DNA from: Macrostomum lignano
Lineage: Eukaryota
Direction: 5' to 3'
DNA length: 64,000 nt
NCBI GenBank assembly: GCA_002269645.1
Contig: NIVC01000337.1
Span: 310,001 to 374,000 of the forward strand
A model generated the notes under the pieces. It made no database searches and was not told where the DNA came from. It saw nothing but the letters and a program-made list of their open reading frames with translations. The position numbers were made by a program, and so were the translations under genes. Every line of letters starts with the position of its first letter. The stretch's first letter is position 1. Shown here piece by piece: positions 1 through 64,000 of this stretch.

Positions 1-1067
1 CAGACACATTGGGACAGACACATTGGGACAGACACATTGGGACAGACACATTGGGACAGACACATTGGGACAGACACATTGGGACAGACACATTGGGACA
101 GACACATTGGGACAGACACATTGGGACAGACACATTGGGACAGACACATTGGGACAGACGCATTGGGACAGACACATTGGGACAGACACATTGGGACAGA
201 CACATTGGGACAGACACATTGGGACAGACACATTGGGACAGACACATTGGGACAGACACATTGGGACAGACACATTGGGACAGACACATTGGGACAGACA
301 CATTGGGACAGACACATTGGGACAGACACATTGGGACAGACACATTGGGACAGACACATTGGGACAGACACATTGGGACAGACACATTGGGACAGACACA
401 TTGGGACAGACACATTGGGACAGACACATTGGGACAGACACATTGGGACAGACACATTGGGACAGACACATTGGGACAGACACATTGGGACAGACACATT
501 GGGACAGACACATTGGGACAGTCACATTGGGACAGTCACATTGGGACAGACACATTGGGACAGACACATTGGGACAGACACATTGGGACAGACACATTGG
601 GACAGACACATTGGGACAGACACATTGGGACAGACACATTGGGACAGACACATTGGGACAGACACATTGGGACAGACACATTGGGACAGACACATTGGGA
701 CAGACACATTGGGACAGACACATTGGGACAGACACATTGGGACAGTCACATTGGGACAGACACATTGGGACAGACACATTGGGACAGACACATTGGGACA
801 GACACATTGGGACAGACACATTGGGACAGACACATTGGGACAGACACATTGGGACAGACACATTGGGACAGACACATTGGGACAGACACATTGGGACAGA
901 CACATTGGGACAGACACATTGGGACAGTCACATTGGGACAGACACATTGGGACAGACACATTGGGACAGACACATTGGGACAGACACATTGGGACAGAGA
1001 CATTGGGACAGACACATTGGGATAGTCACATTGGGACAGACACATTGGGACAGACACATTGGGACAG
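1..1067. repeat. 14-bp minisatellite (CAGACACATTGGGA)n in intron 1 of the left VWA paralog
   Basis: Near-perfect 14-bp tandem units read directly. The array begins a few bases after the exon-1 donor at 1076 (minus strand) and explains the ORFs in all frames. Confidence 0.98.
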
Positions 1068-1076
1068 GCTTCTCAC

Positions 1077-1343
1077 CTTGACATTGGTGGAGAAGCTGAT
1101 GACGGCCGGCCTTGTTGCGGTCTCAGCAATCGGCAGGTGCTCGGCCATCGCCTGCAGGAATTTCTTCAAGTTGGCGAAGTCAGTCCGGGTCAGCGAGGAG
1201 GACACGTCGATGGCGAAGACGATCTCCAGCGGGCTGGGCTTGCAGGTCACGGAGCCGGCGGCCACCGGCTGCGGCGGGCAGACGGCGAGCAGGATGGCAA
1301 CAGCAGCCACCAGAGCGGCCAGGGCGTAACGACTTGTTGCCAT
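1077..1343 (-). CDS. Exon 1 of a secreted VWA-domain protein, paralog of the gene at 5210-10046; remaining exons lie left of the window
   Basis: ATG at 1343, hydrophobic signal peptide, VWA MIDAS motif DVSSS, donor CAAG|GTGAGA at 1077/1076. The mature part is essentially identical to 9792-10000. Confidence 0.88.
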
Positions 1344-1761: not shown

Positions 1762-2741
1762 CAATTTGACTGTCACCAATTTGACTGTCACCAATTTGAC
1801 TGTCACCAATTTGACTGTCACCAATTTGACTGTCACCAATTTGATTGTCACCAATTTGACTGTCACCGATTTGACTGTCACCAATTTGACTGTCACCAAT
1901 TTGACTGTCCCCAATTTGATTGTCACCGATTTGACTGTCACCAATTTGACTGTCACCAATTTGAGTGTCACCAATTTGAGTGTCACCAATTTAACTGTCA
2001 CGAATTTGAGTGTCACCAATTTAACTGTCACCAATTTAACTGTCACCAATTTGAGTGTCACCAATTTGAGTGTCACCAATTTGAGTGTCACCAATTTGAC
2101 TGTCACCAATTTGACTGTCACCAATTTGATTGTCACCAATTTGACTGTCACCGATTTGACTGTCACCAATTTGACTGTCACCGATTTGACTGTCACCAAT
2201 TTGATTGTCACCAATTTGACTGTCACCGATTTGACTGTCACCAATTTGACTGTCACCAATTTGACTGTCACCAATTTGACTGTCACCAATTTGATTGTCA
2301 CCGATTTGACTGTCCCCAATTTGATTGTCACCAATTTGACTGTCACCGATTTGACTGTCACCAATTTGACTGTCACCAATTTGACTGTCACCAATTTGAC
2401 TGTCACCAATTTGATTGTCACCGATTTGACTGTCACCAATTTGACTGTCACCAATTTGACTGTCACCAATTTGAGTGTCACCAATTTGAGTGTCACCAAT
2501 TTAACTGTCACGAATTTGAGTGTCACCAATTTAACTGTCACCAATTTAACTGTCACCAATTTGACTGTCACCAATTCGAGTGTCACCAATTTGACAGTCA
2601 CCAATGAACTACAGTCACCAATGAATTACATTCACCAATGAACTACAGTCACCAATGAATTACATTCACCAATGAATTACAGTCACCAATGAATTACATT
2701 CACCAATGAATTACAGTCACCAATGAATTACAGTCACCAAT
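1762..2741. repeat. 15-bp minisatellite (TGTCACCAATTTGAC)n grading at ~2600 into a 17-bp unit (TCACCAATGAATTACAG)
   Basis: Units read directly; both share the TCACCAAT core. Confidence 0.97.
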
Positions 2742-2801
2742 GGCTCGGCATCAACACATCCAGCCTCTTATAAATATTATTGCTGCTTCGACTGCTTTCA
2801 G

Positions 2802-4421
2802 AACCCTGCTTCTCAGGAGGTGAAGCTGCAGTTTTTGTTTCGAAAGGTACTTGAAAGTGCCACAGTACGCTCGTGTGATGATGGGGTTTAGGCTGTGACA
2901 GAGTCTCTCACCAAACCGCCGCTTCTCCATACAGCAATGGTTCGATTCGCGGTTGCCGTGGCATGGCAAGTTCAACTCGACTTTTGACGATATTGAGGTC
3001 ATCCATGTGGCACCCGGTAAACTTTGGCAACCCGAAGCGACAACAAACTCTGAGTGAGTTGCGAGGAACACTGAGCCAATCGTGCCCACAGATACTAAAA
3101 TATCGAGATGAGCCACTCAGGCATACATCTTAGTAAAACAGCTTTCTACTTTCAGTTCAGTAGCAAAGAAGAATACATAAGCTATTTTAAAGGCAGCTGA
3201 AATGATTTGATAGGTTTAGAAGCCAGCGTAATCCAGGCGTGCACAGACGTGCATAGATGCAGGCGTAAACAACTTGCTAATTGGTTCAGCAATAATGTAC
3301 ATTAGCCAGTCATCTGAAATGTACATGGCAACTTTAGGCTGGAATTCCGAGAAAGGCAATAAAAATTGGGGAGGGGCGGGTCGGGGGTAGTGTGGATAGG
3401 CGCGGTGGGGGTTTAGGCTTGGGGTAAGAGTCAATAAATGAGCCCTGGCTTTAAAAATTCATTAAAATGCTTCAATTTAACTCACTACTGAACTGAAAGT
3501 AGTTAACACGCAAAAATGTGCTGATGGGCCCATCCAGTTATTCTAGTATCTGTGCTCGTGCCAGGAAAACCTTGAAAATAATTTCGATGCCATAATTGTT
3601 TCACTACGCAGGATGGAGCGGAAGGAGGTGGCGCCGAACCAGACGCCAGCTCGAATCGTGAGCGATGGGGCGGTCTATCACAGCAAGATGCTGCACGCCA
3701 CTTTCAAGTGTCAGATGGAAATGCTTTTCTTCCCGTTCGACAGTCAGAAATGCGGCCTAATCTTCAGCCCCCAGATGCAGAGCAGGTATGAAACATCGCT
3801 CGAGGTGGCTTCATTCCCAGATAACGGACCTGGAACCTACCTGACCAAGAGCAGCGAGTTTTGCGTACAGAAAATAATTATAGAAGAGCGTGTCATTGGT
3901 GACGGTTTCGATGCGGTTGACACGATCATCCTTGCGCTCGAATTTCAAGTAAGTCGGTATTGAAACAACCTTTTCCGTCTTGAACACGATCAAGAAGTCA
4001 AGAGGGCAAGAGGTTAGGAGGGCAAGAGGTAAAGAGGTCAAGAGGTCAGTAAGTCAAAAAATGTCGAATCGGGTATTCCCGACATCTGGCTGCCAAAAAC
4101 TTAGGTAATAGGTTTTGATTAGGGTCGGTGGTTCGATAGTTGGCAGTCAAACTGGGACAGTCAGATGTCGCTGGGAAGAAGAGATTGCAGCAGGTGGCTG
4201 CAAGCGCTGCTGATCAGCTAACTGACGTTTCCGACAACCCAGCGAGTCCATCTGGCAACGAGTGGGCCGCAGTAGTGGAATCGGCCGATAAAGTCTTCTA
4301 CTATGCTTATGCAGTTGCCACGGTGATTCCGGCTCTAGCAATCAACGCTCTTTATGCCACTACAAATGAGACTGAGTGTGTTCAAGGACTCTATGGCTCT
4401 TTGTTGGATGTGATCGACTGA
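2802..4421 (+). CDS. Cys-loop (pentameric ligand-gated ion channel, nAChR-like non-alpha) gene or pseudogene; partial, M1-M3 not found
   Basis: Exons 2802-2846, 2935-3053, 3612-3948 and 4140-4421 join in frame at canonical GT/AG. Motifs: QWFDSRLPW...IEVIHV...LWQPE, Cys-loop C-QMEMLFFPFDSQK-C (C-x13-C with FPFD), and pre-M4/M4 EWAAVVESADKVFYYAYAVATVIPALAI. No vicinal Cys in loop C. The 5' exon(s) were not identified. Confidence 0.8.
3087..3554. mobile_element. 468-bp MITE (8-bp TSD class, P or hAT superfamily) in a pLGIC intron
   Basis: Imperfect TIRs starting CACAGATACT at both ends; TSD ATCGTGCC/CTCGTGCC (7/8); reverse-complement homolog of 10788-11241. Confidence 0.88.
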
Positions 4422-5209
4422 CTGTGTAGCATCGCACCTTCAGGCTTATTGATTGACTAACGAGTAAATTGATACGGCACTGCAACACATCGAGACGAAA
4501 CCTGAGCAAACTATACGAATAATCTGGTTAAGGTGAAAACAATATCAACAGGATACTGGTAGCATCTCGAAACAATTCTCAAACTTTGCATGAAACGAGT
4601 AATAAGAATACTCAGCATAGCATCGCAGCTGTACATCCTGTGTGAGCGTGTGTATGATTGCGTGCCTGCGTACTGTATCTGTATGTGCTCAGCGGAATGG
4701 GTTGTGGGACCATATCGCACAAAACTTTGCCCCAAGACGCCGACAGCCTTCTGGCAATTGCAATTATCAATATTATTATTATTATAACCTCGTAAAAGCC
4801 AAAAAAACTTCAACAAGTATCAAATTCTCCTGTATTCATTAGACTGATTGATTGTGTAGTGACTGCTTGTTGCGTACACCTTTCTTGTTACGTCTATCGA
4901 TCTCTATTTTCTTTTGAACTGCCATCAGTTATCGACTTTATACCGAAACACTTATTTGCGTTCAATAAGGTTTCAAACCTACTTTCTAATTCTGCTTTCT
5001 AAATGAATAATTAATAATTTATTTAGCAAATAAAGTCTTCTGCTACTTTCATATCATTACCCCTCTAGCACAACAAGTGTACTGAGTAGTCTCTTTCATT
5101 AATATTTAACCTTGAAAGTTGTATAATAAGTAACTAAATTCATGATAAATTTTGTAAGGAAGTAGTCATATAGTAAGCATAACTATGCATATCCACGCGA
5201 GTGGCTGCT

Positions 5210-8200
5210 TCACGGCTTGGCGTTGGCGTCGGCGGTGATCACCCTCAGCAGCGGGCTGCCATTCTGCGCCTGGCAGCTGCAGTGGCCGAACAGGGCGCCA
5301 CGGTCGTCGTGGCACTTGAAGTTGGCGCTGCTGGAGGTGCCGTAGCACCGGTTCTCAGAGCCGGGGCACTCTGCAGAGAGATAGAGACTTGGTCACGCTC
5401 ATGCGCTTTTCAGCTACTGATAGAAAGTTTGAACAAGTAGTATCTTACCTTGAGCAGTGGGCTTGAACACTTCCGTCTGAGAGGTTGGCCGCTTGCAGAC
5501 GAAGGTGGCGCACTCGGACTTCCAGGTCTCACCCTCGTAGTACTGGTTGCCGTTGATGGGGTCGGTGCAGATCACCTCTGCGGGTCGGGATATAGCACGC
5601 ATGCGTGTATAATAAACAAGGAAAAAGATCACGGAAATCATGTACAGTAAGGACAGTGCAGCTCAATTTGAGCAATCTGTGTTTGATCGTTAATTTTTTC
5701 TTGCAAAATGCATTCTATCTACTTTCATTTAGGCCTATGAGTTCGTAGGGCTTTCTAGCTTTCGAAAAGGCACTTGGAGAGGCTCGATGGGACTGTCAAG
5801 TAAAACCTGCGATCTGTTAAACAGAATATTGCCAACGCCCTAGTTTCTAGCTATATTAGAGACGGCTACTATTTTCTCCAAAGAGGATGTTAGCCGTGCC
5901 ATCGCAAATCCCGTCCAACCGAAGCCATTGGCCCGGACGGCCTTCGCCCTTTGCTTCTCAAGCGCTTTGGACCCACCCAACAACATAACCGGATCTGCCC
6001 TGCAGCTAAAAGCCTAGAACGTTTACTGCTCCCAGGCTAGTAATTGTGAGGAGCTTCTGTCAGATGAAACCTCCGCAACGCACTGGGTTTACAGCAAGCA
6101 CTTGACACTGTCGACTACTGTGAGTTGCTACAAGGCCTGCAAAGTCCTACCACTCCAGCATGGCTCACTTAATGGGTGGTCAACTACATCTGCGGCCGTC
6201 AGGCACGGACTAACTTCAGGGCAGCGACATCTCGGCGCACTGTACATTTACACATGCATATATGGATGTCCCTCAGGGGCACCTCCATCAGCCCTTTGCT
6301 GTTTGCGCAGCTTTTGCGCAGGTCTAAATGCCAAAACTAAGTGAGCGAATTAGCCATGCACTGTTACAGCGGGAAAATGTCGGCGGGCAAAATTCCGACG
6401 GCCAAACAAATGCATCCCGAGGAAAAAGAGAGGAAAGCATATTACGAGCTACGAGTACAAAGCCTAGCCAAAGCTAAAGTACACACATTTTATCTAAGCC
6501 AAGCTACTAAACTTTCGCTAGCAAGCTGTTAAAAGTTTTGCCTGTCCGGTGAGGTTCTTGAGTCAATGGTTGGCCCTTTTTCCCCCCTATAAAGCCCCTT
6601 GTTTGTGTTCCACCCCAATTCAGTGCATGAGAGGCGAGAGCTCAAGTGCATGTGTGAAAACAACACATCGTCAACATGGAAACTCACTGCAAGGCGAGAT
6701 GGTTCGCGACACAATCTTCTTGTTGCAGCGGCCCTGAGCATCGAACTCGTACTTGATCTCGGTCACCTTCTGCAGGCTGTTGAAGCAAGTCGACACCACC
6801 CGCTTGGGCGGCAGGTCGCACAGGCTCGGATCTGGCGGTGTGATGCTCTCGCAGGTCTCCTCCGAGATCTTGGCAGCCCAGTCCATCAGCTTGTTGAAGT
6901 CCGTAGCGTAGAAGAGGTGGTCGGAGAGCGGCGGGGTCGCGATAGCCTGCAGCTCCTCTCTGGAGCGAAATGATTGATAAGTCGTGAGTCATATCTCAGG
7001 ACCATTCTATCCGGAAATCCAGATTAAAACTCTTATTCTGGGGTTACACTAAGAACTACTAGGGGTCCTTGGCACGCATTCAAGATTCCATTTCGTCTTC
7101 TGCTATATGTTAGCATGAAGCATGGCTAGTTATGGACGACGAGAAAATCGGCTTTGATATAGGGGCATAATGTGGGGGGCCGCAAGCAACCGCCAGCAAT
7201 TAGGCCATTGCGAGCCACTGAACCTGTGTGTCCGCGCGCGTGTGTATATGATAAACGTATGGATGAGCAATAAATTTACGAACATGGTGAGCATGTTTTT
7301 GGCTACTCACCACACGAAGAATCGGATACTGAAAGCAAGAATGCAACAAAAGACATTTTACGAGCCATACCGCACAAGTTCCCGATGGAACCTTTCTACA
7401 CCCAGAAGGTGGGATTGTATGCTCACCTCTTGAGGTCCTTGCCTACGCCAATCACAACGATGGTTGTGCCTTCGCTCTCCAGTTTGGCCGCCTCGCTGAT
7501 GGCATTGGCGCCGCGGTTGCTCTCGCCGTCGGTCATGAGGATGGCCATGCGGGACACGCCGGGACGGGAGAGCCGGCCGAGCTCTGTGCGAGCCTTGGCG
7601 ATGCCGTCGCCGGTGTTCGTCCACTGATTGACGCGCCTCTGCAGGGCCAGGATGCGCTGCAGCAGCTGCGGCTTGGAGCCGATGGAGCCCAGCGGGATGT
7701 CGTTCCACACGTTGGTGCCGAACACGATGACGCCGATGTGGATGGCGCCGGGACCGACCTTCATGTTGCTAACCATGCGGTGGACGAAGTTCACCTGCAG
7801 TCGCCAGTTCTGGTCATTGATGGAGCCGGAGCTGTCCAGGATGAACATGATCTCGGCCACTGGCTCCTTGCACTCTTCGATAGCATCTGCGGGCAAGTTG
7901 GAGCTAAGATTTTAGTGAGAGGTGTGGATGGCTGTACGTATATCACGGCAGATAGCAATTGATTGCGAATTTCGTCAGAGGAGCTCACCATCCAGCTATG
8001 GCTGGATGGTGGCGCAAAGGTTTCTATCCCTTCAGCAGGCACTCACTGCAGTCGGTCTCCTGCACGGATCGCCGGAGGACGCACTTCTGCTGCTTGACGT
8101 CATAGTCCTCCCAGGTGGTGACAATCTTGCGAACGCCGTTTACGCAGTCCTCAATTGTCACATCCACATCCTTGCAAAGGTGAGAGTTGCCTGTGGAGAG

Positions 8201-10787: not shown

Positions 10788-11241
10788 CACAGATACTAGA
10801 ATAACTGGATGGGCCACTCAGCACATTTGCGTGTAAACTACTTTCAGTTCAGTAGTAAGTTAAACTGAAGCATTCTAATGTATTTTTAAAGTTTTAAAGC
10901 TAAGGCTCATTTATTGACTCTTACACCCCAAGCCTAAACCCTCCAAACCGCGCCTATCCACACTACCCCCAACCCGCCCCGCCCCAAATTTTATTGCCTT
11001 TCTCGGAATTCCAGCCTAAATCTGCCATGTACATTTCAGTGGACTGGCCAATGTACATTACTGCCGAACCAATTAGCAAGTTGTTTACGCCTACAAGCTT
11101 GGGCTTCTAAACTTATCAAATCATTTCAGCTGCCTTTAAAATAGCTTATGTAATTCTTCTTTGCTACTGAACTGAAAGTAGAAAGCTGTTTTACTAAGTA
11201 TGTATGGCTGAGTGGCCCATCTCGATATTTGAGAATCTGTG
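10788..11241. mobile_element. 454-bp MITE, same family as 3087-3554, opposite orientation
   Basis: Perfect 8-bp TSD CGTTAAAC (10780-10787 and 11242-11249); TIRs CACAGAT...GATGGGCCACTCAGC; internal inverted ACTTTCAGTTCAGTAG. Confidence 0.92.
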
Positions 11242-15161: not shown

Positions 15162-15902
15162 TCACTCGAATTTCGTCCGCTTAGCCGGCGGTCCTTCGCT
15201 GTGCCGCCGATCGCCAAAGCCACCGCCTCGGCCGCCGCCGCGGTCAAAGCCGCCGCGACCGCCGCCGCGGTCAAAGCCGCCCCGACCGCCGCCGCGACCG
15301 CGGTCAAAGCCGCCACCGCGACCTCCGCGTCCACGGTCAAAGCCACCGCGACCGCCACCCCGCCCGCGATCAAAGCCGCCGCCGCGGCCGCCACCGCCTC
15401 GGCCCCTATCGAAGCCGCCCCGACCGCGGTCCCCGCCGCGTCCGCCCCTGCCGCCCCTCGGAGCGCCGCGCGGCTGCGGCAGAAACCTGGCTAACGGCAG
15501 CAGCTTCATGGAGTCGATGAACACCTTCGTGTCCTTGCCGAGCGACTGGCACTTCACGCCGGGCGCCATCTTTACGGAGAAGTACGCGTCCTTGATGGGA
15601 CCGAATATCTCGTCCACCTTGCCGATTTGCTCCTTGTTCTCCAGGAAGATGGGCGCATTGAAGTAGGGAATCTTCTCGTGCGTCAGCTTGCACACCATGT
15701 CCTCCACGCACGGCTGCATGAAGTAGCCGACCTCGTCCACGCTGGCCGGCGGGCCCTGGTCCTCGTACCGGCCGCCGCCTCCGCCACCGCGGCCGCCTCG
15801 GAAACCGCCGCCTCGGAAGCCGCCGCCGCGACCTCCGCGAAATCCGCCACCGCCGCCGCGACCTCCTCCGCGACCGCCGCCGCCACCGCCTCTGAATCCC
15901 AT
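15162..15902 (-). CDS. GAR1: H/ACA snoRNP subunit GAR1 (246 aa, intronless CDS; probable 47-nt 5'UTR intron 15951-15905)
   Basis: N- and C-terminal RGG/FRGG tracts flank the core [12 protein letters not shown]...[25 protein letters not shown]...YFSVK...[10 protein letters not shown]. Confidence 0.97.
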
Positions 15903-16026
15903 GGCTGCAAGCGACAAGTTGAATGAATAAAAAACTGATGTTGCTGCTTACGGCAGGCAACAAGTTATAAAATAATTTCTTCTTATCACTCAATGAAGCA
16001 GGCGACAAAAAACGAATCAATATCCC

Positions 16027-17655: not shown

Positions 17656-20600
17656 TCAGGCCACGGACTGCCTGGCTTTCTTCTTTTTCTTCTTGTCGGA
17701 CTGGGGCGCCGCCGCCTCTTCTTCTTGAGGCTCCGCCGCGGCCGCCTCTTCGCGGTGCTTTTTCTTGGCCTTCTTGGCTGAGGCGGGCTGCTCCTCACCA
17801 GGCTCCTGCTTCACCTCCGCCTGCAATGCGAGTGCAAGGTGGGAAGTTCGTGATTTCGGGTCAGTCTAAAGTACAGTTCATCCTCTCGTAACTTGCATCG
17901 TTGCTCACTAGGAAACTTCTGTTTTCAGCTTTCACCGTTTCAGTTATCTTCTGTAACCCCACACTGATCCCATGGAGTCCCACACTGATCCCATGGAGTC
18001 CCACACTGATCTCGTGGATTCCCCACACTGATCCCATAGAGTCCCACACTGATCCCATGGAGTCCCACACTGATCCCATGGAGTCCCACACTGATCTCGT
18101 GGATTCCCCACACTGATCCCATAGAGTCCCACACTGATCCCATGGAGTCCCACACTGATCCCATGGAGTGCCACACTGATCCCATGGAGTCCCACACTGA
18201 TCCCATGGAGTCCCACACTGATCCCATGGAGTCCCACACTGATCCCATGGAGTCCCACACTGATCCCATGGAGTCCCACACTGATCCCATGGAGTCCCAC
18301 ACTGATCCCATGGAGTCCCACACTGATCCCATGGAGTCCCACACTGATGCCATGGAGTCCCACACTGATCCCATGGAGTCCCACACTGATCCCATGGAGT
18401 CCCACACTGATCCCATAGAGTCCCACACTGATCCCATGGAGTCCCACACTGATCTCATGGAATCCCACACTGATCTCGTGGATTCCCCACACTGATCCCA
18501 TGGAGTGCCACACTGATCCCATGGAGTCCCACACTGATCTCGTGGATTCCCCACACTGATCCCATGGAGTGCCACACTGATCCCATGGAGTCCCACACTG
18601 ATCTCATGGAATCCCACACTGATCTCGTGGATTCCCCACACTGATCCCATGGAGTGCCACACTGATCCCATGGAGTCCCACACTGATCTCGTGGATTCCC
18701 CACACTGATCCCATGGAGTGCCACACTGATCCCATGGAATCCCACACTGATCCCAGGGAATCCCCATACTGATCCCAGGGAATCCCCACACTGATTCCAG
18801 GGAATCCTCACACTGATCCCAAGGAAACCAACAAACTGATCCCAGGGAATTTTCATACTTCTCAAGGAAGTTTCATACTGACATATCATTTTCGTGAGTC
18901 CTTTTATACCCCAACAAATGCCGCAACAAGCGCAGCGCCACTCTCACCGCCTGCTCATCGCGCTGCTGCTTCTTTTTCTTCTTTGGCGGCGACGAAGCTG
19001 ACGCAGCCTCGGAGTCGCCGTCTCCGCCGACGGCTGCAGCCGGCCGCTTCTCGCCGCGCTGCTCGGCGTTGGCGGCCGAAGCGTCGGCGTCCCGCTTGCC
19101 GGTGTAGCCGGCGCCGGAGGGCCCGAAGTCCGGCACGAAGCGGTCCGACTGGGCGCGGGCCCGGCCGAGGCCGCCGCGGCCGCCGCCTCCGGACTCCAGG
19201 CTCTTGAGCCGGCGCTCCAGGTACGCCCTGCTGGCCAGGCCCATGTCCGGGCCGACGCTGTCGCCTTCGCCCAGTGCGTCAACGCGGATGGCCAGAGCGG
19301 TCTTGGCGGCCAGCATGCGGGAGATTTTGCCTTTGATCTTGGCGTTGGCCTGACCGACCAGGGAGGCGTGGTACAGCAGGCCGTACTTCGGAGTCTGGTG
19401 CTTGGTCTTGAGCGCGCGGAATAGCGCCTTCTCGGCGCCGAGAATCTGCACCGTTGATGACGGGTGCTTGGCCAGAGACAGCAGTGTGCCGGCGTGAGAG
19501 ATCAGGCGGGCGCCGACCAGCTCGCCGACCAGAACCGTCAGATTTGGCGCCACGGCATTCATGCGGCTGCGAATGTAGTCATAGAGCTGAGTCCGGTATT
19601 CGCTCATCTCGGACACCTGGTCGCACATTGAGTGCACTGCGACCAAATCCGCATCCGTCATCTCCGTGCCCAGCGACACCAAAGCGGCGTTGCGCACATC
19701 TTCAATTATCTGTGGGGAATGAGTTCGGGTTGGTGTACATGCTGGGATGGGATTGGCGTACATGCTGGGGATGGGATTGGCGTACATGCTGGGATGGGAT
19801 TGGCTTACATGCTGAGGATGGGATTGGCGTACATGCTGGGGATGGGATTGGCGTACATGCTGGGGATGGGATTGGTGTACATGCTGGGATGGGATTGGCT
19901 TACATGCTGGGATGGGATTGGCGTACATGCTGGGGATGGGATTGGTGTACATGCTGGGGATGGGATTGGCGTACATGCTGGGGATGGGATTGGCGTACAT
20001 GCTGGGGATGGGATGGGATGGTGTTAGAGTGTTTACAGAAACACTCATTTAGAACTCAGCAGACAGCAGAGTGAAGTCACACAAACCTCTTCCGGCAGGC
20101 ACTCGGTCAGGTCGGTGCTAATGGCATTCTCACGCAGTCCCATGGTTTTGACGGCTTTGACGTAGGCCTGGCCATCCTGCACAATCTTGGCCAGCTCGGG
20201 AAAGTGCCAGCCGTACATCTCCTTGACGCGCATCACGTAGTTGTTGGTTTCCTTGTCCAGGTCGTCCAGCAGGGAGATGGCCTGCACAATCATTGTGTCG
20301 ATCTTGTCGGGGCTGAACTTCAGCTTGTACCTGCAGGGTGTTGGCAGCGGGTTAATGGGTGAAGGAACAGAATTTATTGCTAATCAAGACAAAGAGTACA
20401 TGGATAAAAAACAATGGCTCGCTAATCTGGCATGGCCTATATTGACGAAGGAACATAATGGATTGCTAATTTAGTCAACAAAGAGCAAGATGGATTGCTA
20501 ATCTGGTCAACAAAGAGCAAGATGGATTGCTAATCTAGTCAACAAAGAGCAAGATGGATTGCTAATCTAGTCATCAGAGAGCAAGATGGATTGCTAATCT

Positions 20601-21434
20601 AGTCAACAAAGAGCAAGATGGATTGCTAATCTAGTCAACAGAGAGCAAGATGGATTGCTAATCTAGTCAACAAAGAGCAAGATGGATTGCTAATCTAGTC
20701 AACAAAGAGCAAGATGGATTGCTAATCTAGTCAACAAAGAGCAAGATGGACTGCTAATCTAGTCAACAAAGAGCAAGATGGATTGCTAATCTAGTCAACA
20801 GAGAGCAAGATGGATTGCTAATCTAGTCAACAAAGAGCAAGATGGATTGCTAATCTAGTCAACAGAGAGCAAGATGGATTGCTAATCTAGTCAACAAAGA
20901 GCAAGATGGATTGCTAATCTAGTCAACAAAGAGCAAGATGGATTGCTAATCCAGCCAAAACAGCTCGCACGCAATGTGAGCTTACCTGCTCAGGCTGTGC
21001 GCCAGTCCCAGCTGCATAGCCGCCATCTCTCGCGGCGCCACCTGGGGCAGCAGGGCGTCTATTTGGGACCGGATCGCCCGCACCAGCTCCATCACGGCCG
21101 AGCTGCACACGCAGCCGATGCCCAGCTTCTCCTTGATGGCGCTGCCCAGCCGAGAGTCGGCAACGCCGAGAACTCCGTCGAGCACTTCGGTGGTCTGCAG
21201 TTTGCGCAATGCCTTGCGCAGCTTCTTGCTGATGCGGCCCTCCAGCAGGGAAGTGGTGGCTGCCAGGGCCTCCGTAATGTCATCGAACTTGACAAACTGA
21301 CACAGCTGAACGGCCGAGGCGGCGGCGGAGGCGTCGGCAAAGTCGCCGAGCACATTCTGGCTCTCCACTAGCCGCTTCTCGTCTAGCACCTTGAAGATGG
21401 CGAAGCCGGCGGAGGACTCGAGTAGCACTAGCAT
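17656..21434 (-). CDS. NOP58: Box C/D snoRNP core protein NOP58 (539 aa)
   Basis: Exons 21434-20986, 20330-20087, 19709-18948 and 17820-17656 (1620 nt, in phase). Motifs [87 protein letters not shown]; Lys-rich tail. Confidence 0.96.
17957..18845. repeat. 21-bp minisatellite (CCCACACTGATCCCATGGAGT)n in NOP58 intron 3
   Basis: Read directly. Confidence 0.97.
19733..20020. repeat. 23-24-bp minisatellite (GGGATGGGATTGGCGTACATGCTG)n in NOP58 intron 2
   Basis: Read directly. Confidence 0.96.
20458..20952. repeat. 32-bp minisatellite (GATGGATTGCTAATCTAGTCAACAAAGAGCAA)n in NOP58 intron 1
   Basis: Read directly. Confidence 0.97.
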
Positions 21435-21689
21435 TGGGGAGCTGCGCCGCGGTTCATGCATACAGTGCATAGTTTTGTTTCCAGATCAGTAAGTCAAGGG
21501 GGCATTAGTCAGTGCTGCAATTTAAGACGCTCTCAAACTGGCCCTGAGCCAGTCCTGCCACTTGTATCTCAAATCCTCTCTACAAAATAGTACCGCTGTA
21601 ACCAAAACTTTCCCATATCCATCTCTTTTTCTCATAGCTTATCCACATCACTTAGCTAATTAATTTACTGATTAAAAATAAATTAAGCG

Positions 21690-36406: not shown

Positions 36407-39256
36407 TCACTTGGCAACAGCCGACACAACGGTAGCAGCAGGGTTATTGGTGTAGAACTGGATGTTGTTCTCTGCCTCGGGCCTCGCGTACACTGCGTAC
36501 AGCTTCGGAGCGAACAGGATCGACAGCAGCAGCGCGTGCGTGAGGCTGGACGAGAACGCAAGCAGCAACATTGCGGTAGTCAGAGAGCTGGCCGAAAGAG
36601 CGGACGGAACGAACGCCGACCACAAGAAGAGGCCGGACACTCCGCAAGCCAGGATGCACTTGGTGTCGTGAAAGTTGTCCGGAAGCGATCGGGTCTTCAG
36701 CGACAGGCCGCACGTGACAGTCAGGATCAGCAGGTTACAGCACAGCGGAGTCCAGAATGCCGTGGTCGCGATCGCGCAGTTCTTCTCCACGACTGGTCGG
36801 ACCGAAGGATCGGTCACAATCTGTTTGAGCTCCGAGCTCAGTGGTCGGAACACGGTCACTCCGCTAAGCAGCAGGCACTGCAATGCACCGCATGGATGGG
36901 TTCTAATCTCATTTGCTGGTGCGTGTCATATGCTCGTAGCTACACATTTGTCCTACAGCATGTCCTGCGTTTGTCCTACAGCATGTCCTGCATTTGTCCT
37001 ACAGCATGTCCTACATTTGTCCAACAGCATGTCCTGAATTTGTCCTACAGCATGTCCTGCATTTGTCCTACAGCATGTCCTGCATTTGTCCTACAGAATA
37101 TCCTGCATTTGTCTTTAAAGCATGTCCTGAATTTGTCCTACAGCATGTCCTGCATTTGTCCTACAGAATTTCCTCACCATTCCAAAAATGACTGCGGCCA
37201 GCATCATCAGCATCGGCTTCTGTCGCGCGAGCCAAGGTACCGGACGACCCACTCTGGATGCAGAGAAGATCAGATGGACGCGAAGGGTCTTCACCAACTG
37301 ACTCGCGTAGCAAGCAGTCAGGCTGAGCTGGAATGCGCAGTTCAAAGCATTGCACATTACGTGCGAGCTGTCTACAGCGAACAGACCGAGACACGCTAGA
37401 CCGAGGAGGTTCCCACACATGCACGTGACGGACAAGTGTATCGACGAGGCCTTGATGAGCTTGTGGTGTCGACGGTTGATGAACAGAGCGAGCACGACGA
37501 CCAGGAAGATCGAGAGTAGAGCGAGACATGCCAGCAGCACAGGAAACTGCAGTCCGTCTCTCCACGCGTACACCGGTATCGACTCGCAGCTCAGCCGGTC
37601 TTGACTGGGCCAGTGAAACTCCGAACACGACAGACACGACTTGCCATCATCCGACACGATCTCCTGCTTGAAGCACGGCTTGCACGTAAAGCAGCAAGCA
37701 TCTGTCTCCAACTTGATTTCGCCAGCACTGCACGGAGCACTGCAGAATGACTTTGGCAGTTCCGACTGAGCTGCATGCTGATCGGAGCTCGAGTTCTGCC
37801 ACCATCGAATAGGTGTGAGGTCGCTCAACGTAAGACCGGCTGACTCCGTCCACGTTCCGACCTTCACCAACTGACCGTCCGGCTGCTCCTGACGAATCTC
37901 GTAGGCCGGCGATCCGTCACCGCTCGAGTCGAAGCTCACGTTTCCGGTTCGCATGAAAGGGAAGCTGGAGTTCGCAAGCAGCTTCATCACCTTCGGACCT
38001 GTGACACATGCACTCACAGCCGTAACATTCGGCCACTTTGTCGCGCAATCGATCAGAGCGACACGCTCGATACACGAGACCAGAATGTTGATTGAGTCCA
38101 GAAGTCTTGCGACAGGAGCCACCTCAGAGTCGATTGATAGACTCGACTTTGAGCCGACTCTACAACTGCCGTCAGAGCAGCACGATGCAGCGCTATCCAA
38201 TGTGCAGTTGAAGAGAAGTCGGAGCAGTTGTTCGCCGAACGGATAGCCGAGGACCTCAGACCCGTTCAGTGAGTGGTAGAACTGGATGAGGTCGGGCGTG
38301 GCGAACTTTGTAAACGAGGTATAGATCGCACCCGTGGTGAAATGTTTGTAGGCAACGGAATTCGCATCCGTTGTGATGATAACTCCTTTTCTGCTACTTA
38401 TCACTTGGAGTACAAACTCAGGCATTTTGCTAAACGTGTCAAACATAAGAAAGCCACGCAGGTGGGGGTACTGACTCATCTGGGTGTCGACATCCTCCTT
38501 TGTCAAAAACATGTTGATAGGTAAAGTGAAAGCCACGCACACTGTCTGACCGAATTTGCTACTTTGCTGAAGCAGTAGACGCGTGTTCTGGAGCAGTCCT
38601 CTACCGTACACATCGTCTCTGTGCACGATTCCTACCATGGTCCAGTTGAAGTACTGCACGAGGTGTACGACTGCCTTGGCCTGGTAGCTGTCAGGAGCTA
38701 CTTGACGGAACACGTTGGGGTAGAGCGTCTTGTCCGACAGAGCATCGCTGCTGCACTCGTTTCCGACCTGCGGCATGGAGTAGAGAGACAGCTGACGGGA
38801 CACCAGCTGCGTCTCGCTGCTACGCCAGCCCGACACGACGGCATGAACGAAGTAGAACTTTTCTCCGAGGCTGGACACTACCTGGTCGCAGAATCCGGCA
38901 GCCGCATCAAGGCCGGTCGGGTGTGTCCATGCGGGCCTTATCCGCTTCAGCATGTCCACCAGACGACGGTCCAGGTAGCACGGATCAAGATGGAGCAGAC
39001 CGAGGCGGAGATTGCGACTGGTCCATTTCGCATTGATGAGTTTAGCAGCGTAGTGCGGTGCCAGATTGCGCAGAAAAATTTGTTCGCTTATCATTGAATT
39101 GTGAGTGTCACAGTATTTATTCACACTTTGCAGAACGGCTAAGTTGATGAGGCCGTTCGGGACGCATAGCACCTGTCCAGGGTGGTACTCTACATTCTGG
39201 GCTGTAACTGTGTGCAAAAGATAAAGCGCAACAACTGTGGTTGCTGAGAGGGCCAT
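36407..39256 (-). CDS. Class C GPCR (mGluR/CaSR/taste-receptor-like), copy A, 849 aa
   Basis: Exons 39256-37178 and 36877-36407. Signal peptide, Venus flytrap domain (SDALSDKTLYPNVFRQVAPD...FNWT), Cys-rich domain (FCSAPC...CCFTCKPC), 7TM with VKTLRV, KTRSLPDNFHDTK and LFAPKLY. Confidence 0.95.
36950..37170. repeat. ~23-bp minisatellite (CAGCATGTCCTGCATTTGTCCTA) in the GPCR A intron; homologous arrays at ~47975-48200 and ~59800-60060
   Basis: Read directly in all three paralog introns. Confidence 0.93.
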
Positions 39257-47436: not shown

Positions 47437-50285
47437 CTAAGACCTTGATGCCATAACGGTAGTAGCAGGGTTATTGGTGTAGAACTGGATGTTGTTCTCT
47501 GCCTCGGGCCTCGCGTACACTGCGTACAGCTTCGGAGCGAACAGGATCGACAGCAGCAGCGCGTGCGTGAGGCTGGACGAGAACGCAAGCAGCAACATTG
47601 CGGTAGTCAGAGAGCTGGCCGAAAGAGCGGACGGAACGAACGCCGACCACAAGAAGAGGCCGGACACTCCACAAGCCAGGATGCACTTGGTGTCGTGAAA
47701 GTTGTCCGGAAGCGATCGGGTCTTCAGCGACAGGCCGCACGTGACGGTCAGGATCAGCAGGTTGCAGCACAGCGGAGCCCAGAACGCCGTGGTCGCGATC
47801 GCGCAGTTCTTCTCCACGACTGGTCGGACCGAAGGATCGGTCACAAGCTGTTTGAGCTCCGAGCTCAGTGGTCGGAACACGGTCACTCCACTAAGCAGCA
47901 GGCACTGCAATGCCCCGCATGGATGGGTTCTAATCTCATTTGCTGGTGCGTGTCATATGCTCGTAGCTACACATTTGTCCTACAGCATGTCCTGCGTTTG
48001 TCCTACAGCATGTCCTGCATTTGTCCTACAGCATGTCCTGAATTTGTCCTACAGAATATCCTGCATTTGTCTTTAAAGCATGTCCTGAATTTGTCCAACA
48101 GCATGTCCTGAATTTGTCTTTAAAGCATGTCCTGAATTTGTCTTTAAAGCATGTCCTGAATTTGTCCTACAACATCTCATGCATTTGTCCTACAGAATTT
48201 CCTCACCATTCCGAAAATGACTGCGGCCAGCATCATCAGCATCGGCTTCTGTCGCGCGAGCCAAGGTACCGGACGACCCACTCTCGATGCAGAGAAGATC
48301 AGATGGACGCGAAGGGTCTTCACCAACTGACTCGCGTAGCAAGCAGTCAGGCTGAGCTGGAATGCGCAGTTCAAAGCATTGCACATTACGTGCGAGCTGT
48401 CTACAACGAACAGACCGAGACACGCTAGACCGAGAAGGTTCCCACACATGCACGTGACGGACAAGTGTATCGACGAGGCCTTGATGAGCTTGTGGTGTCG
48501 ACGGTTGATGAACAGAGCGAGCACGACGACCAGGAAGATCGTGAGTAGAGCGAGACATGCCAGCAGCACAGGAAACTGCAGTCCGTCTCTCCACGCGTAC
48601 ACCGGTATCGACTCGCAGCTCAGCCGGTCTTGACTGGGCCAGTGAAACTCCGAACACGACAGACACGACTTGCCATCATCGGACACGATCTCCTGTTTGA
48701 AGCACGGCTTGCACGTAAAGCAGCAAGCATCTGTCTCCAACTTGATCTCGCCAGCACTGCACGGAGCACTGCAGAATGACTTTGGCAGTTCCGACTGAGC
48801 TGCATGCCGATCGAAGCTCGAGTTCTGCCACCATCGAATAGGTGTGAGGTCGCTCAACGTAAGACCGGCTGACTCCGTCCACGTTCCGACCTTCACCAGC
48901 TGACCGTCTGGCTGCTCCTGACGAATCTCGTAGGCCGGCGATCCGTCACCGTTCAAGTCGAAGCTCACGTTTCCGGTTCGCATGAAAGGGAAGCTGGAGT
49001 TCGCAAGCAGCTTCATCACCTTCGGGCCTGTGACACATGCACTCACAGCCGTAACATTCGGCCACTTTGTCGCGCAATCGACCAGAGCGACGCTCTCGAT
49101 ACACGAGACCAGAATGTTGATTGAGTCCAGAAGTCTTGCGACAGGAGCCACCTCAGAGTCGATTGATAGACTCGACTTTGAGCCGACTCTGCAACTGCCG
49201 TCAGAGCAGCACAATGCAGCGCTATCCAATGTGCAGTTGAAGAGAAGTCGGAGCAGTTGTTCGCCGAACGGATAGCCGAGGACCTCAGATCCGTTCAGCG
49301 AGTGGTAGAAGTGGATGAGGTCGGGCGTGGCGAACTTTGTAAACGAGGTATAGATGGCACCCGTGGTGAAATGTTTGTAGGCAACGGAATTCGCATCCGT
49401 TGTGATGATAACTCCTTTTCTGCCACTTATCGCTTGGAGTAAGAATTCTGGAATGCTACTAAAGGTATCGAATACAAGAAAGCCACGCAGGTAGGGGTAC
49501 TGACTCATCTGGGTGTCGACATCCTCCTTTGTCAAAAACATGTTGATAGGTAAAGTGAAAGCCACGCACACTGTCTGACCGAATTTGCTACTTTGCTGAA
49601 GCAGTAGACGCGTGTTCTGGAGCAGTCCTCTACCGTACACATCGTCTCTGTGCACGATTCCTACCATGGTCCAGTTGAAGTACTGCACGAGGTCTACGAC
49701 TGCCTTGGCCTGGTAGCTGTCGGGAGCTACTTGACGGAATACGTTGGGGTAGAGCGTCTTGTCCGACAGAGCATCGCTGCTGCACTCGTTTCCGACCTGC
49801 GGCATGGAGTAGAGAGACAGCTGACGGGACACCAGCTGCGTCTCGCTGCTACGCCAGCCCGACACGACGGCATGAACGAAGTAGAACTTTTCTCCGAGGC
49901 TGGACACTACCTGGTCGCAGAATCCGGCAGCCGCATCAAGGCCGGTCGGGTGTGTCCATGCCGGCCTAATCCGCTTCAGCATGTCCACCAGACGACGGTC
50001 CAGGTAGCACGGATCAAGATGGAGCAGACCGAGGCGGAGATTGCGACTGATCCATTTTGCATTGATGTGTTTAGCAGCGTAGTGCGGTGCCAGATTGCGT
50101 AGAAAGATAGATTCTGTGAGCTTCGCTCCAGGTGTGTCGCAGTAGAACTGTGTGCTCTCTAATACGGCTAAATTAATTATTCCGCTTGCGATGCACAGTT
50201 GCTGTCCGGGAAGGTACGTGACAGTTTGAGATGCAAGTCCAAGAACTAGAGTATAAGCAATTGCAGCTGCTGTCAGTGAAGTCAT
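47437..50285 (-). CDS. Class C GPCR, copy B, 848 aa
   Basis: Exons 50285-48207 and 47904-47437; same architecture as copy A. Confidence 0.95.
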
Positions 50286-54790: not shown

Positions 54791-56375
54791 ACTTTGAAGT
54801 TGGATTCACAAAGGAAGATTTATCTCGTTCTTCTCTGTGTTAAAACTCGCCATAACTTTCGGCTTAAAATACGCAGAAAACCGTTGCTCAAACGTATTTT
54901 GCTTAAGGAATAGCATGAAACATTGTACGGGCTAATATGGTAGCTCCTAGTTTTGATCCATCATAAACATCGCAATTTGATCCTATTCGGAGTGTCATAT
55001 ATGTGAGATTATGGCTTAACAACTTCAACTAACAACCCATCTTGTCGTGAATGTGGATGCATTGACCTACTCGTAGTACTCGTAGATTTGAAATGCATCT
55101 TTAATCGCAAATACACATGGGAATTGCGACAGCTTAGCTCCTGGTTTAAATCCTGCAGCGCCCATGACGATCAATTTCAAGCTTTTCCTGCTCGTCGAGG
55201 TTTTATCACAGGCTTGAGTAGTTTAAGCTTAACTAACTCAAATTTCTGGGCGCAACTGATAGATTTCTTGCTGCTTCACTTCATACGTGTATCAAGAAAT
55301 TCAATCTGATAAATGGCTTGCAATAAGCAACCGTTAAAAGGTGGCGCTACGAGCGCTCACCACTGCACATTGCACAAGCATGGACTATACTGAGGGAAGG
55401 ACAATGTCAATATTTTAATAACTCATTCAGTGGTTATTCTCTCTCCCTTTAGTCGCTATTCTCGCTAAATTTCTGTCAACTTTTAATGTCAATTGTGCAA
55501 AAATGTGTTCGCAATACACATAGGAGATCGACTTAATCACGGAAATGCTGCTCAGGAACACCACCTTGAGACAGTGATAGGCCGAAAGGGCTGATTGGAT
55601 CTTCGGATGGTAAGATATTCTACGTTCATAAGTTATAAATCTCATATTGAAACATCAAGAATATTTCCTGCAATATCTGCTGCAGCAATTAACTTTTTTA
55701 CTACATGTCTCTACCGAAGATTGCAGTGACGTGACACCACATAGCAAAATCCAATATCCATCAACTCTCAAACCCGTGATTGCTTAGTAAGGGTGGGGAA
55801 AATCTCTGATCGATAAGGTAAAATGTTACAAAGCATGGATTTAATTTTCGGTTTCGTCCAGACCTAACAGATGTGACTATTCAGCTGGAATATCAGAAAG
55901 GAACGCTCGATAAATGAGAAATGCAAATTCATCTCTCATCTTTCATCAATTCACTCTACGCAGGGAGTAGACAGTCGAATTGCGCTGAAACTTTGCTCAT
56001 TCTGCCTGGAATGCTGAGCCAGATCCGATGTTAGTCGCAAATCTATTATTGCAAGCTGAAACTTGTGAACCAGCGCACGCTGTAGGAACAGCGTTCTGAC
56101 CATTACCGTAATGAAACTGCAGCGAAGCACGCGAATCAATATCCTGATAAAACCGTGCCCACGTTTCAGCTTTATCACAACCCGTTCCCCAATATTCTGG
56201 TCAAAAATCTGATTGGGTCAAAAAAGTTTCGACAGTATGAAGCCGGACAGACATCTCTTTAGGCCAAATATAAAAAACTGCACGACTTTACCGAGAAAAA
56301 TGCATTCTTGACGCCTCGTACAGGCCCGTGAAGCAGTTAACCGTCTTGACAAAACGAGTCGAAAGTCCTACTAAC

Positions 56376-63648: not shown

Positions 63649-64000
63649 AGTGAGGGCTGGGCACTTTTTTGGACCCTCTATGTCTCTATTTTTTGCGGCT
63701 TGTTGGTCTGCCACTTTCTTTTTTTATTGGGTATCGAATTGCCTTTGCAGTTCGGGTTACCAGCAAAGTGTCACTAGGAGAGAGAAAATCCTTTCTAAAT
63801 AGCGATGTCCAGCCAAAACAATGCAAATTAATGCTAAACATCCAATGCAAATCGACCCACCCTGAGCCTTGTTTTTACTTTTTGGTTGTGCTCACTGCTT
63901 ACCCCGAATGCTAATTGATGAAGCCGTTTTCCGTGTTGCTTCCCCTTTCTTCTTCCATCTGCTGCCCTGCTGCAGGAACTCTTCTACAAAGTGTACGTTT

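What the first reader, a model, noticed from the sequence alone, without database searches (positions are those of the whole stretch)
2802..4421. Cys-loop receptor whose ligand-binding domain appears to splice straight to M4, with no pore-forming M1-M3
Seen: three in-phase ECD exons end at ...LALEFQ|GTAAGT (3948). The next AG (4139) opens in frame into LAVKLG...EWAAVVESADKVFYYAYAVATVIPALAI, a typical pre-M4/M4 segment. The 191-nt gap has stops in all frames and no hydrophobic coding segment. Known: pLGICs need M1-M3 for the pore, and soluble AChBP-type decoys exist. Inference: the product would be a single-pass, membrane-tethered ligand-binding decoy with inverted M4 topology. Alternatives are a clean exon-deletion pseudogene or a mis-assembly. 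There are no stops or frameshifts in the retained exons.
Basis: partly seen in the sequence, partly recalled or inferred. Interest (0 to 1): 0.72.

Follow-up and report, generated by a model that had tools for sequence, protein, structure and literature searches.

The report
Doubly truncated Cys-loop receptor gene remnant
This is a leftover piece of a neurotransmitter-gated channel gene that keeps most of its ligand-binding part and its last membrane helix, but has lost the pore-forming helices and also its start, so it is most likely a dead gene fragment, not a new kind of receptor.

Summary
Four in-frame exons (2802-2846, 2935-3053, 3612-3948, 4140-4421) read as 260 codons without a stop. 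They encode a Cys-loop receptor ligand-binding domain from strand beta2 to beta10, followed directly by the pre-M4/M4/C-tail segment. No M1-M3 coding sequence exists in the 191-nt gap or anywhere else in the 64-kb window.

The closest relatives are an orphan receptor family of the flatworm Macrostomum lignano (27-41% identity over the ligand-binding part). Every relative examined has a normal M1-M3 exactly where the window has the gap.

About 65-70 residues (signal peptide, helix alpha1, strand beta1) are absent from the window. The first exon has no start codon. Satellite arrays and the start of a divergent VWA gene occupy the upstream space.

The gap looks like a scar: a short intron stump, a (TCAAGAGG)n microsatellite, then a second GTAAGTC followed by 91 nt, the gene's usual intron size.

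The retained exons show no decay and keep 86% of family-conserved positions. The truncation is therefore either recent or the remnant is still used.

Best reading: a gene relic truncated at both ends of the pore region (confidence about 0.6). A working tethered decoy or dominant-negative subunit is not excluded (about 0.1).

The parts
2802..2846 (+). 45-nt micro-exon encoding strand beta2 (NPASQEVKLQFLFRK). It opens at acceptor TTTCAG|AAC in phase 0 and has no ATG.
   Evidence: It aligns to DSATQEIVLQPWFNL of M. lignano P0003 and to the same segment of P0156. The Pfam match begins at residue 3, profile position 43.
2935..3053 (+). Exon encoding QWFDSRLPWHGKFNSTF...LWQPEATTNSE (the W.D.RL.W motif and loop A region).
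   Evidence: tblastn with six relatives, E down to 7e-9; phmmer E = 4.9e-5.
3087..3554 (.). 468-bp MITE-like insertion inside intron 2 (3054-3611). It has 34-nt terminal inverted repeats and an 8-bp target duplication. Without it the intron is about 82 nt.
   Evidence: 85% identical copy at 10788-11241 on the minus strand; inverted repeats; alignment with flanks.
3612..3948 (+). Main ligand-binding exon, from after loop A to strand beta10. Cys-loop at 3709-3753, family-conserved EFC Cys at 3862-3864. It ends ...ILALEFQ|GTAAGT, exactly where relatives continue with R-R-S-x-FY of M1.
3949..4139 (+). 191-nt gap where the M1-M3 coding sequence should be. It holds donor GTAAGTC at 3949, the (TCAAGAGG)n microsatellite at 3990-4057, a second GTAAGTC at 4049, and acceptor TAG at 4137-4139. 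The stretch 4049-4139 is 91 nt, the size of the gene's other introns.
   Evidence: Stops in all frames and both GTAAGT positions; microsatellite; no M1-M3 similarity.
4140..4421 (+). Last exon: tail of the intracellular loop, pre-M4 motif EWAAVVESADKVF (from 4260), M4 (about 4293-4358), conserved tail Cys (4377-4379) and C-tail ...GLYGSLLDVID, stop TGA at 4419-4421.
   Evidence: Alignment to P0157 residues 287-372; hydropathy; AlphaFold2 helices at residues 176-199 and 209-246; coordinates.
1762..2742 (.). 15-mer and 17-mer satellite arrays that end 60 nt upstream of the first retained exon, where the missing 5' exon(s) would be expected.
   Evidence: Tandem Repeats Finder; no N-terminal pLGIC similarity in 1-2801.
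1077..1343 (-). First exon of a divergently transcribed VWA-domain gene ([11 protein letters not shown]... with a signal-peptide-like start). It bounds the space available for 5' exons of the receptor gene.
   Evidence: Sequence; Pfam VWA E = 5.5e-9.

Best explanation
This is a non-processed remnant of a Cys-loop (pentameric ligand-gated channel) gene. It belongs to an orphan family best represented in the flatworm Macrostomum lignano, and it has been truncated twice.

1. The 5' exon(s) for the signal peptide, helix alpha1 and strand beta1 are gone. Satellite arrays sit where they should be.
2. The exon(s) for M1-M3 and the start of the intracellular loop (about 104-113 residues) were deleted between two introns. 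The deletion left the upstream donor, a short intron stump, a microsatellite, and the complete downstream intron with its own GTAAGTC donor and its acceptor.

Both surviving splice sites are in phase 0, so the beta10 exon can join the M4 exon in frame. That join is a by-product of the deletion, not a design.

The locus cannot make a channel because it has no pore helices. As it stands it cannot make a secreted ligand-binding domain either, because it has no start codon, signal peptide or beta1 strand. If it is transcribed, the likely outcome is an untranslated RNA or a cytosolic, misfolded product.

Shown: the exon anatomy, the absence of M1-M3 and of the N-terminus from the window, and the homology of each retained part. 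Inferred: the order and mechanism of the deletions, and the loss of function.
For: - Relatives run ...ALKFQ-RRSAFY(M1)...M3...FLNRL-VTGRK...M4. The window runs ...ALEFQ|gap|LAVKLGQSD-VAGKK...M4. Nine residues stand where P0157 has 113.
- Every relative examined has a normal Neur_chan_memb domain.
- tblastn and family profiles against the six-frame translation of all 64 kb find no M1-M3 and no N-terminal exon. The positive control scored E = 5e-23.
- The gap holds a second GTAAGTC at 4049. Only 10 GTAAGT occur on this strand in 64 kb, so about 0.03 are expected in the gap. The stretch 4049-4139 is 91 nt, against 88 nt for intron 1 and about 82 nt for intron 2 once its MITE is removed.
- A microsatellite sits at the presumed junction.
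- The M. lignano model P0003 jumps from DFCVMN to RKALFY. This points to an intron just before the M1 exon in the family, at the same place as donor 3948.
- The upstream space is taken by satellites and by the start of a divergent VWA gene.
- The reading frame has no ATG before codon 56.
Against: - The retained 260 codons have no stop or frameshift.
- They keep 24 of 28 family-conserved ligand-binding-domain columns (86%), within the 77-93% range of full-length paralogs.
- The C-tail motif is conserved to the last residues.
- AlphaFold2 folds the product confidently, mean pLDDT 82.6.
- All four acceptors and three donors are canonical.
- The acceptor at 2802 (TTTCAG) fits the M. lignano spliced-leader acceptor motif, and that leader ends in ATG (PMC8629364), which would be in frame.
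- 5' exons could lie beyond the left edge of the window.
- No transcript, read or orthologue data were available.
Confidence: 0.6

Rival explanations
1. The locus is a functional pore-less receptor derivative. It would be expressed either from 5' exons outside the window or by spliced-leader trans-splicing at 2802. It would act as a membrane-tethered ligand-binding decoy, or as a dominant-negative partner that co-assembles with full-length subunits, by analogy with human dupalpha7 (CHRFAM7A).
For: - The retained exons are intact and as conserved as in working paralogs.
- The join is in frame with canonical splice sites.
- The model is confident, with a beta-sandwich plus a long M4 helix.
- TTTCAG|AAC fits the M. 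lignano trans-splice acceptor motif [T/C]TNCAG, and the M. lignano leader ends in ATG, which would be in frame.
- Truncated receptor genes with regulatory roles are known (CHRFAM7A, PMC8998457).
Against: - No signal peptide, alpha1 or beta1 exists in the window. A leader-supplied ATG would give a cytosolic, non-secreted domain in which the Cys-loop disulfide is unlikely to form.
- No relative among the 150 best hits, nor the two further M. lignano relatives, shows a ligand-binding domain joined directly to M4.
- The gap looks like a deletion scar.
- dupalpha7 keeps M1-M4, which is how it co-assembles. This product lacks them.
- It is not shown that the window's organism uses such a leader; none was found in the window.
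Confidence: 0.12
2. The structure is an assembly artefact. The true locus is a full-length receptor gene, and the assembler collapsed or dropped sequence at the (TCAAGAGG)n microsatellite (M1-M3 exons) and at the long satellite arrays (5' exons).
For: Both missing parts abut simple repeats: the microsatellite at 3990-4057 and the satellites at 1762-2742. Such repeats are typical sites of assembly error. The retained exons are undecayed.
Against: - A short microsatellite of about 60 nt is well within read length for any modern platform.
- The gap keeps an orderly intron-stump / intron structure rather than an abrupt break.
- The sequence upstream of the satellites is a coherent, differently oriented gene.
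- This could not be tested here because no reads were available.
Confidence: 0.13
3. The gap is not a single intron. A 54-nt in-frame mini-exon (3995-4048, KSRGQEVRRARGKEVKRS) is spliced in between beta10 and M4, using AG at 3993-3994 and the second donor at 4049.
For: The stretch is open, runs from phase 0 to phase 0, and is bounded by AG and GTAAGTC.
Against: - It consists of the 8-mer microsatellite, so its openness follows from purine-rich composition.
- It has no similarity to any part of the family.
- The upstream intron would be only 46 nt, against 82-91 nt for the others.
- Either way it adds no transmembrane helix, so the main conclusion does not change.
Confidence: 0.05

Closest known systems
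Orphan Cys-loop receptor family of Macrostomum lignano (UniProt A0A1I8... models; P0157, P0156, P0001, P0003, P0005, P0006 here)
   Same: The ligand-binding domain is 27-41% identical, the same range as the paralogs show among themselves. Shared motifs are W.D.RL.W.GKFNS, LWQP, FPFD.Q.C, EFC, EW..VV.ADK.F and the tail C..G...SL.D. The exon starts at Q-W and at E|ME.K match breaks seen in the M. lignano gene models.
   Different: All of them carry M1-M3 (LPSILLLAIS...PPECGERVSFSITIVLSMCVFLQL...) and an N-terminal SPDE..L..YN..VRPPPDNG.AN.V.V segment. The window has neither. The window is not from the annotated M. lignano proteome: its own proteins are absent from the databases.
5-HT3A and nicotinic acetylcholine receptors (cation-selective branch of pentameric ligand-gated channels)
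   Same: These are the best solved-structure matches of the family profile (5-HT3A, E = 1e-53) and of the window model (6be1_A, TM-score 0.63 on the query). The beta-sandwich with a C-x13-C loop and the MA/M4 helices are shared.
   Different: There are no M1-M3 helices and no N-terminal helix or beta1 strand. The loop-B tryptophan is absent from the whole flatworm family (alignment). The ligand is unknown.
Acetylcholine-binding proteins of molluscs and annelids (soluble decoys; from my own knowledge, Smit et al. 2001)
   Same: Both are a ligand-binding domain of this superfamily without a pore.
   Different: Acetylcholine-binding proteins are complete, secreted domains with a signal peptide and no membrane helix. 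This product lacks the signal peptide and beta1 and keeps M4.
CHRFAM7A / dupalpha7 (human partial duplication of CHRNA7 exons 5-10; PMC8998457; PDB 9qto is listed)
   Same: Both are partial copies of a receptor gene that lack the N-terminal part of the ligand-binding domain. dupalpha7 shows that such a fragment can have a regulatory (dominant-negative) role.
   Different: dupalpha7 gained new 5' exons (FAM7A) that supply a start codon, and it keeps all four membrane helices. This locus has no visible start and lacks M1-M3.
Non-processed (duplicated or unitary) pseudogenes with exon loss
   Same: Introns are retained and essential exons are deleted. A mobile element sits in an intron and simple repeats sit at the breakpoints.
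   Different: The retained exons carry no disabling mutation, so the truncation is young or the remnant is still constrained.

Membership tests
[quoted passage not shown] | Extracellular Neur_chan_LBD domain with a C-x13-C loop | tested here: met
   Pfam PF02931 E = 2.2e-20. CQMEMLFFPFDSQKC lies at 3709-3753. The match covers only profile positions 43-160, and beta8-beta10 are supported by relatives. The domain is incomplete at its N-terminus.
[quoted passage not shown] | Pore-forming transmembrane helices M1-M3 (Neur_chan_memb) | tested here: not met
   No Pfam match. No tblastn or family-profile hit anywhere in the 64 kb; best E = 1.4.
[quoted passage not shown] | Signal peptide, N-terminal helix and strand beta1 | tested here: not met
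   No hit with a family N-terminal profile (best E = 0.23, at an unrelated site) or with tblastn. No ATG precedes codon 56.
[quoted passage not shown] | C-terminal M4 helix preceded by an amphipathic pre-M4 segment | tested here: met
   Alignment to P0157 residues 287-372, E = 7e-11. Hydropathy peak at residues 219-240. AlphaFold2 helices at 176-199 and 209-246.
Acetylcholine-binding-protein-type soluble decoy | Complete, secreted ligand-binding domain with a signal peptide and no membrane segment | tested here: not met
   The N-terminus and signal peptide are absent. M4 is present.
Acetylcholine-binding-protein-type soluble decoy | Aromatic ligand-binding box (loop B Trp and others) | tested here: inconclusive
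   The position 7 residues after the second Cys-loop cysteine is Q in the window and in P0157, and I in P0001 (alignment). The family's ligand is unknown, so this says little about binding in general.
Dominant-negative partial-duplicate subunit (dupalpha7 type) | Retains M1-M4, so that it can co-assemble into pentamers | tested here: not met
   M1-M3 are absent.
Dominant-negative partial-duplicate subunit (dupalpha7 type) | Expressed from acquired 5' exons or a promoter | not testable with these tools
   No transcript data were available. The only hints are TATAAATA at 2770-2777 and a trans-splice-like acceptor at 2802.
Non-processed pseudogene / gene relic | Loss of parts indispensable for the parental function, with introns retained | tested here: met
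   Three introns are retained. The M1-M3 exons and the 5' exons are missing.
Non-processed pseudogene / gene relic | Relaxed constraint (stops, frameshifts, loss of conserved residues) in what remains | tested here: not met
   There are no stops or frameshifts. 86% of family-conserved columns are kept, against 77-93% in paralogs. dN/dS was not computable because no close orthologue was found.

The most novel reading that the evidence does not exclude
The remnant is a living gene. It would be expressed from an upstream exon outside the window, or by trans-splicing of a leader that ends in ATG onto the phase-0 acceptor at 2802. It would give a pore-less protein made of a ligand-binding domain and M4, which regulates full-length receptors of its family as a tethered decoy or an assembly poison. 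That would be a naturally evolved single-pass derivative of a pentameric channel subunit.
Probability: 0.1. Interest if true: 0.65.

Novelty: new member of a known kind. Interest (0 to 1): 0.25.

Why it matters
If this is a relic, as seems most likely, it matters mainly for annotation. Gene predictors will be tempted to call a 260-residue receptor here, or to fuse it with neighbours. The flatworm receptor family it belongs to is already poorly modelled: the M. lignano models are fused tandem arrays and skip a 15-residue micro-exon. If it proves to be expressed and conserved, it would be a rare natural case of a channel subunit reduced to a ligand-binding domain on a single helix. That would bear on how decoys such as acetylcholine-binding proteins and regulators such as dupalpha7 arise from channel genes.

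Tried and rejected
- A word-indexed protein search with the 260-residue product gave no hit. With a family alignment it gave four hits, two of them M. lignano.
- I tried to fetch genomic loci of relatives to map their introns. The M. lignano models P0001, P0005 and P0009 are not on record.
- P0151, listed as a member of one M. lignano protein cluster, turned out to be a 35-residue ORF on a bacterial contig.
- Identifying the organism failed. A window GPCR has only a distant insect hit, an exact look-up of the LRR protein found nothing, and Rfam found nothing in the window.
- No spliced-leader RNA gene is in the window.
- The bacterial promoter and terminator scan is irrelevant to this eukaryotic locus.
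- The literature searches did not return a paper on natural subunits made of a ligand-binding domain plus M4. The Tribolium paper does not discuss truncated variants.
- I rejected M1-M3 being hidden in intron 2. That intron is a MITE plus about 82 nt.
- I rejected a retrocopy, because introns are present.
- The possible disulfide between the EFC cysteine and the tail cysteine could not be checked, because model coordinates are not exposed.

Full report
**What is in the sequence.** The window is eukaryotic: spliced genes, minisatellites, and no Rfam or bacterial features.

Four segments on the plus strand join in frame:
- 2802-2846: acceptor TTTCAG|AAC, donor AAG|GTACTT.
- 2935-3053: acceptor ATACAG|CAA, donor CTGA|GTGAGT, ends in phase 2.
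- 3612-3948: acceptor ACGCAG|G, donor CAA|GTAAGT, ends in phase 0.
- 4140-4421: acceptor GATAG|TTG, stop TGA at 4419-4421.

The 783 nt give 260 residues without a stop. Pfam places residues 3-122 in Neur_chan_LBD (E = 2.2e-20), starting only at profile position 43. The Cys-loop CQMEMLFFPFDSQKC is intact at 3709-3753.

The 191-nt interval 3949-4139 has stops in all three frames.

**Relatives.** A word-indexed search found nothing. An exhaustive HMMER search found 490 proteins with E <= 0.001.

The best hits are Macrostomum lignano proteins. Several of them are fused models of tandem receptor genes. A second search added P0156 and P0157.

P0157 is the closest. Identity is 41% over the family alignment of the ligand-binding part (40% in the pairwise BLASTP), and the C-terminal part aligns from V-x-G-[KR]-K through M4 to the tail motif C..G...SL.D... 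Paralogs within M. lignano are only 27-42% identical to one another, and the window sequence falls in that range.

The family profile is closest to 5-HT3A and nicotinic receptors among solved structures. The family lacks the loop-B tryptophan (alignment), so its ligand is unknown.

The window's own proteins are absent from the databases. The source is therefore not the annotated M. lignano proteome. A related flatworm is my inference and was not shown.

**What is missing in the middle.** In P0157 the chain runs ...VDAVILALKFQ-RRSAFYVTNLLFPSILLL...(M1-M3)...ALFLNRL-VTGRK...M4. In the window it runs ...VDTIILALEFQ | LAVKLGQSD-VAGKK...M4. Nine residues stand where P0157 has 113.

Every relative for which both parts could be placed has the usual 200-odd residues between the ligand-binding domain and M4, and a Neur_chan_memb domain.

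The M1-M3 segment is the most conserved part of the family. Even so, tblastn with six relatives and a family M1-M3 profile against the six-frame translation of all 64 kb gave nothing better than E = 1.4. The ligand-binding exons scored 5e-23 in the same set-up.

**What is missing at the start.** Relatives begin with a signal peptide, then SPDE..L..L....YN..VRPPPDNG.AN.V.V (helix alpha1 and strand beta1), in all about 65-70 residues.

The first retained exon corresponds to a 15-residue beta2 micro-exon: DSATQEIVLQPWFNL in P0003 against NPASQEVKLQFLFRK here. Neither tblastn nor an N-terminal family profile finds the earlier part anywhere in the window.

The frame has no ATG before codon 56, at 3613. 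The two earlier ATGs in the spliced sequence open short out-of-frame reading frames (my reading).

Upstream of 2802 lie 60 unique bases, then 15-mer and 17-mer satellites (1762-2742). Beyond them are 420 bases with no similarity, and then the first exon of a divergent VWA gene (1077-1343, minus strand). With the gene's usual introns of 82-91 nt, the missing exon would fall inside the satellite array.

**Anatomy of the gap.** Intron 1 is 88 nt. Intron 2 is 558 nt, but 468 of these are a MITE-like element with 34-nt inverted repeats and an 8-bp target duplication. A second copy lies at 10788-11241. About 82 nt of native intron remain.

The gap begins with GTAAGTC at 3949 and contains a second GTAAGTC at 4049. 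Only ten GTAAGT occur on this strand in the whole window, so about 0.03 are expected in the gap. From 4049 to the acceptor is 91 nt, the native intron size. Between the two donors lie 46 nt of intron-like sequence and the microsatellite (TCAAGAGG)n.

I read this as intron stump, then scar, then intact downstream intron. That is an in-place deletion of the M1-M3 exon(s).

Artefacts of the M. lignano gene models agree with introns at the same places. P0003 jumps from DFCVMN to RKALFY, which puts an exon start just before M1. The second unit of P0157 starts at E|MEIKDV, which matches the window's exon 3 start. No genomic locus of any relative could be fetched to confirm this.

The 54 nt at 3995-4048 are open and run from phase 0 to phase 0 (KSRGQEVRRARGKEVKRS). 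They are made of the microsatellite and resemble nothing in the family.

**State of what remains.** There is no decay. The window sequence keeps 24 of 28 columns that are conserved among seven relatives (86%). The same leave-one-out test gives 77-93% for the relatives themselves.

AlphaFold2 models the product with mean pLDDT 82.6. Strands span residues 6-172, and helices span 176-199 and 209-246. Its best structural match is 5-HT3A.

This shows that the exons were under selection for most of their history. It cannot tell a recent truncation from continuing constraint. No orthologue close enough for dN/dS was found.

**Can it be expressed?** The acceptor TTTCAG|AAC fits the M. lignano spliced-leader acceptor motif [T/C]TNCAG. 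The M. lignano leader ends in ATG (PMC8629364), and joined at 2802 that ATG would be in frame. A TATAAATA lies at 2770-2777. These are hints only, and the organism is unknown.

A leader-supplied start would still give no signal peptide. The ligand-binding domain would then be cytosolic, with M4 in its native in-to-out orientation. It would not be an extracellular decoy.

Such an exon could only lie beyond the left edge of the window, with the VWA gene nested in that intron.

**Verdict.**
- Most likely (about 0.6): a gene relic truncated on both sides of the retained ligand-binding exons.
- Assembly error at the two repeat-flanked breakpoints (about 0.13). This cannot be tested without reads.
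- A functional pore-less derivative (about 0.12).
- A mini-exon variant (about 0.05), which does not change the main point.

Truncated receptor genes with regulatory roles do exist (CHRFAM7A, PMC8998457). They keep the membrane helices that this locus lacks. Soluble acetylcholine-binding proteins (my own knowledge) have the complete secreted domain that this locus lacks.

The finding is real but ordinary in kind. Its value lies in correct annotation and in a modest chance of a genuinely unusual protein.

Noticed in passing
window 3087-3554 and 10788-11241 (minus strand): Two copies (85% identical) of a 468-bp MITE-like element with 34-nt terminal inverted repeats (CACAGATAC...) and 8-bp target duplications ((A/C)TCGTGCC and GTTTAACG). 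This is suggestive of a hAT-type element. One copy fills most of intron 2 of the receptor remnant.
   Followed up: partly
window 3949-4139: A second GTAAGTC donor-like motif lies at 4049, exactly 91 nt before the acceptor. A 54-nt open stretch running from phase 0 to phase 0 (3995-4048, KSRGQEVRRARGKEVKRS) is built from the (TCAAGAGG)n microsatellite.
   Followed up: partly
window 2770-2802: TATAAATA lies at 2770-2777, about 25-30 nt upstream of the first retained exon. The acceptor TTTCAG at 2796-2801 fits the M. lignano spliced-leader acceptor motif. That leader ends in ATG, which would be in frame with the exon.
   Followed up: partly
window 1-1067, 1762-2605, 2594-2742: Three long, very regular minisatellite arrays: a 14-mer with 76 copies at 98% match, a 15-mer with 56 copies, and a 17-mer with 9 copies. 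Similar coding-looking satellites occur elsewhere, for example at about 11.6-12.1 kb, 13.7-14.9 kb, 17.9-18.8 kb and 27.7-28.5 kb.
   Followed up: no
window 37115-39256 (-), 48177-50285 (-), 56328-59817 (+), with second exons at 36407-36883, 47437-47910 and 60098-60607: Three closely related class-C GPCR paralogs (ANF_receptor + NCD3G + 7tm_3), two in tandem and one inverted. Each has a long first exon and a separate exon for the second half of the 7TM domain. The only database hit is a distant insect mGluR (27% identity).
   Followed up: partly
Macrostomum lignano proteins P0001, P0003, P0153, P0157 (UniProt A0A1I8...): The public models of this receptor family are fusions of two or three tandem genes. 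Most of them skip the 15-residue beta2 micro-exon, which only P0003 and P0156 include. The family is badly annotated.
   Followed up: partly
window 3862-3864 and 4377-4379; P0156, P0157, P0001, P0003: A single cysteine in the EFC motif of the ligand-binding domain and a single cysteine just after M4 are found in the window and in most full-length relatives examined. They may form a disulfide that ties the extracellular C-tail to the domain.
   Followed up: no
L001 4009-4116 (JGI metagenome contig Ga0485102_07071531): A 35-residue ORF on a clearly bacterial contig (IclR, Peptidase_S51 and TctC neighbours) is filed in the same 90% cluster as a M. lignano receptor fragment. This is presumably a spurious cluster membership.
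   Followed up: yes
window 1077-1343 (-), 7426-7896 (-), about 5190-5600 (-), 15165-15917 (-), 18876-21470 (-), 61978-63714 (-): Neighbouring genes are two VWA-domain genes, a small Cys-rich gene tail-to-tail with the receptor remnant, Gar1, a Nop56/58-type gene (NOP5NT + Nop domains), and an LRR single-pass membrane protein. No other receptor gene of this superfamily is in the window, so the remnant is isolated and not part of a tandem array.
   Followed up: partly
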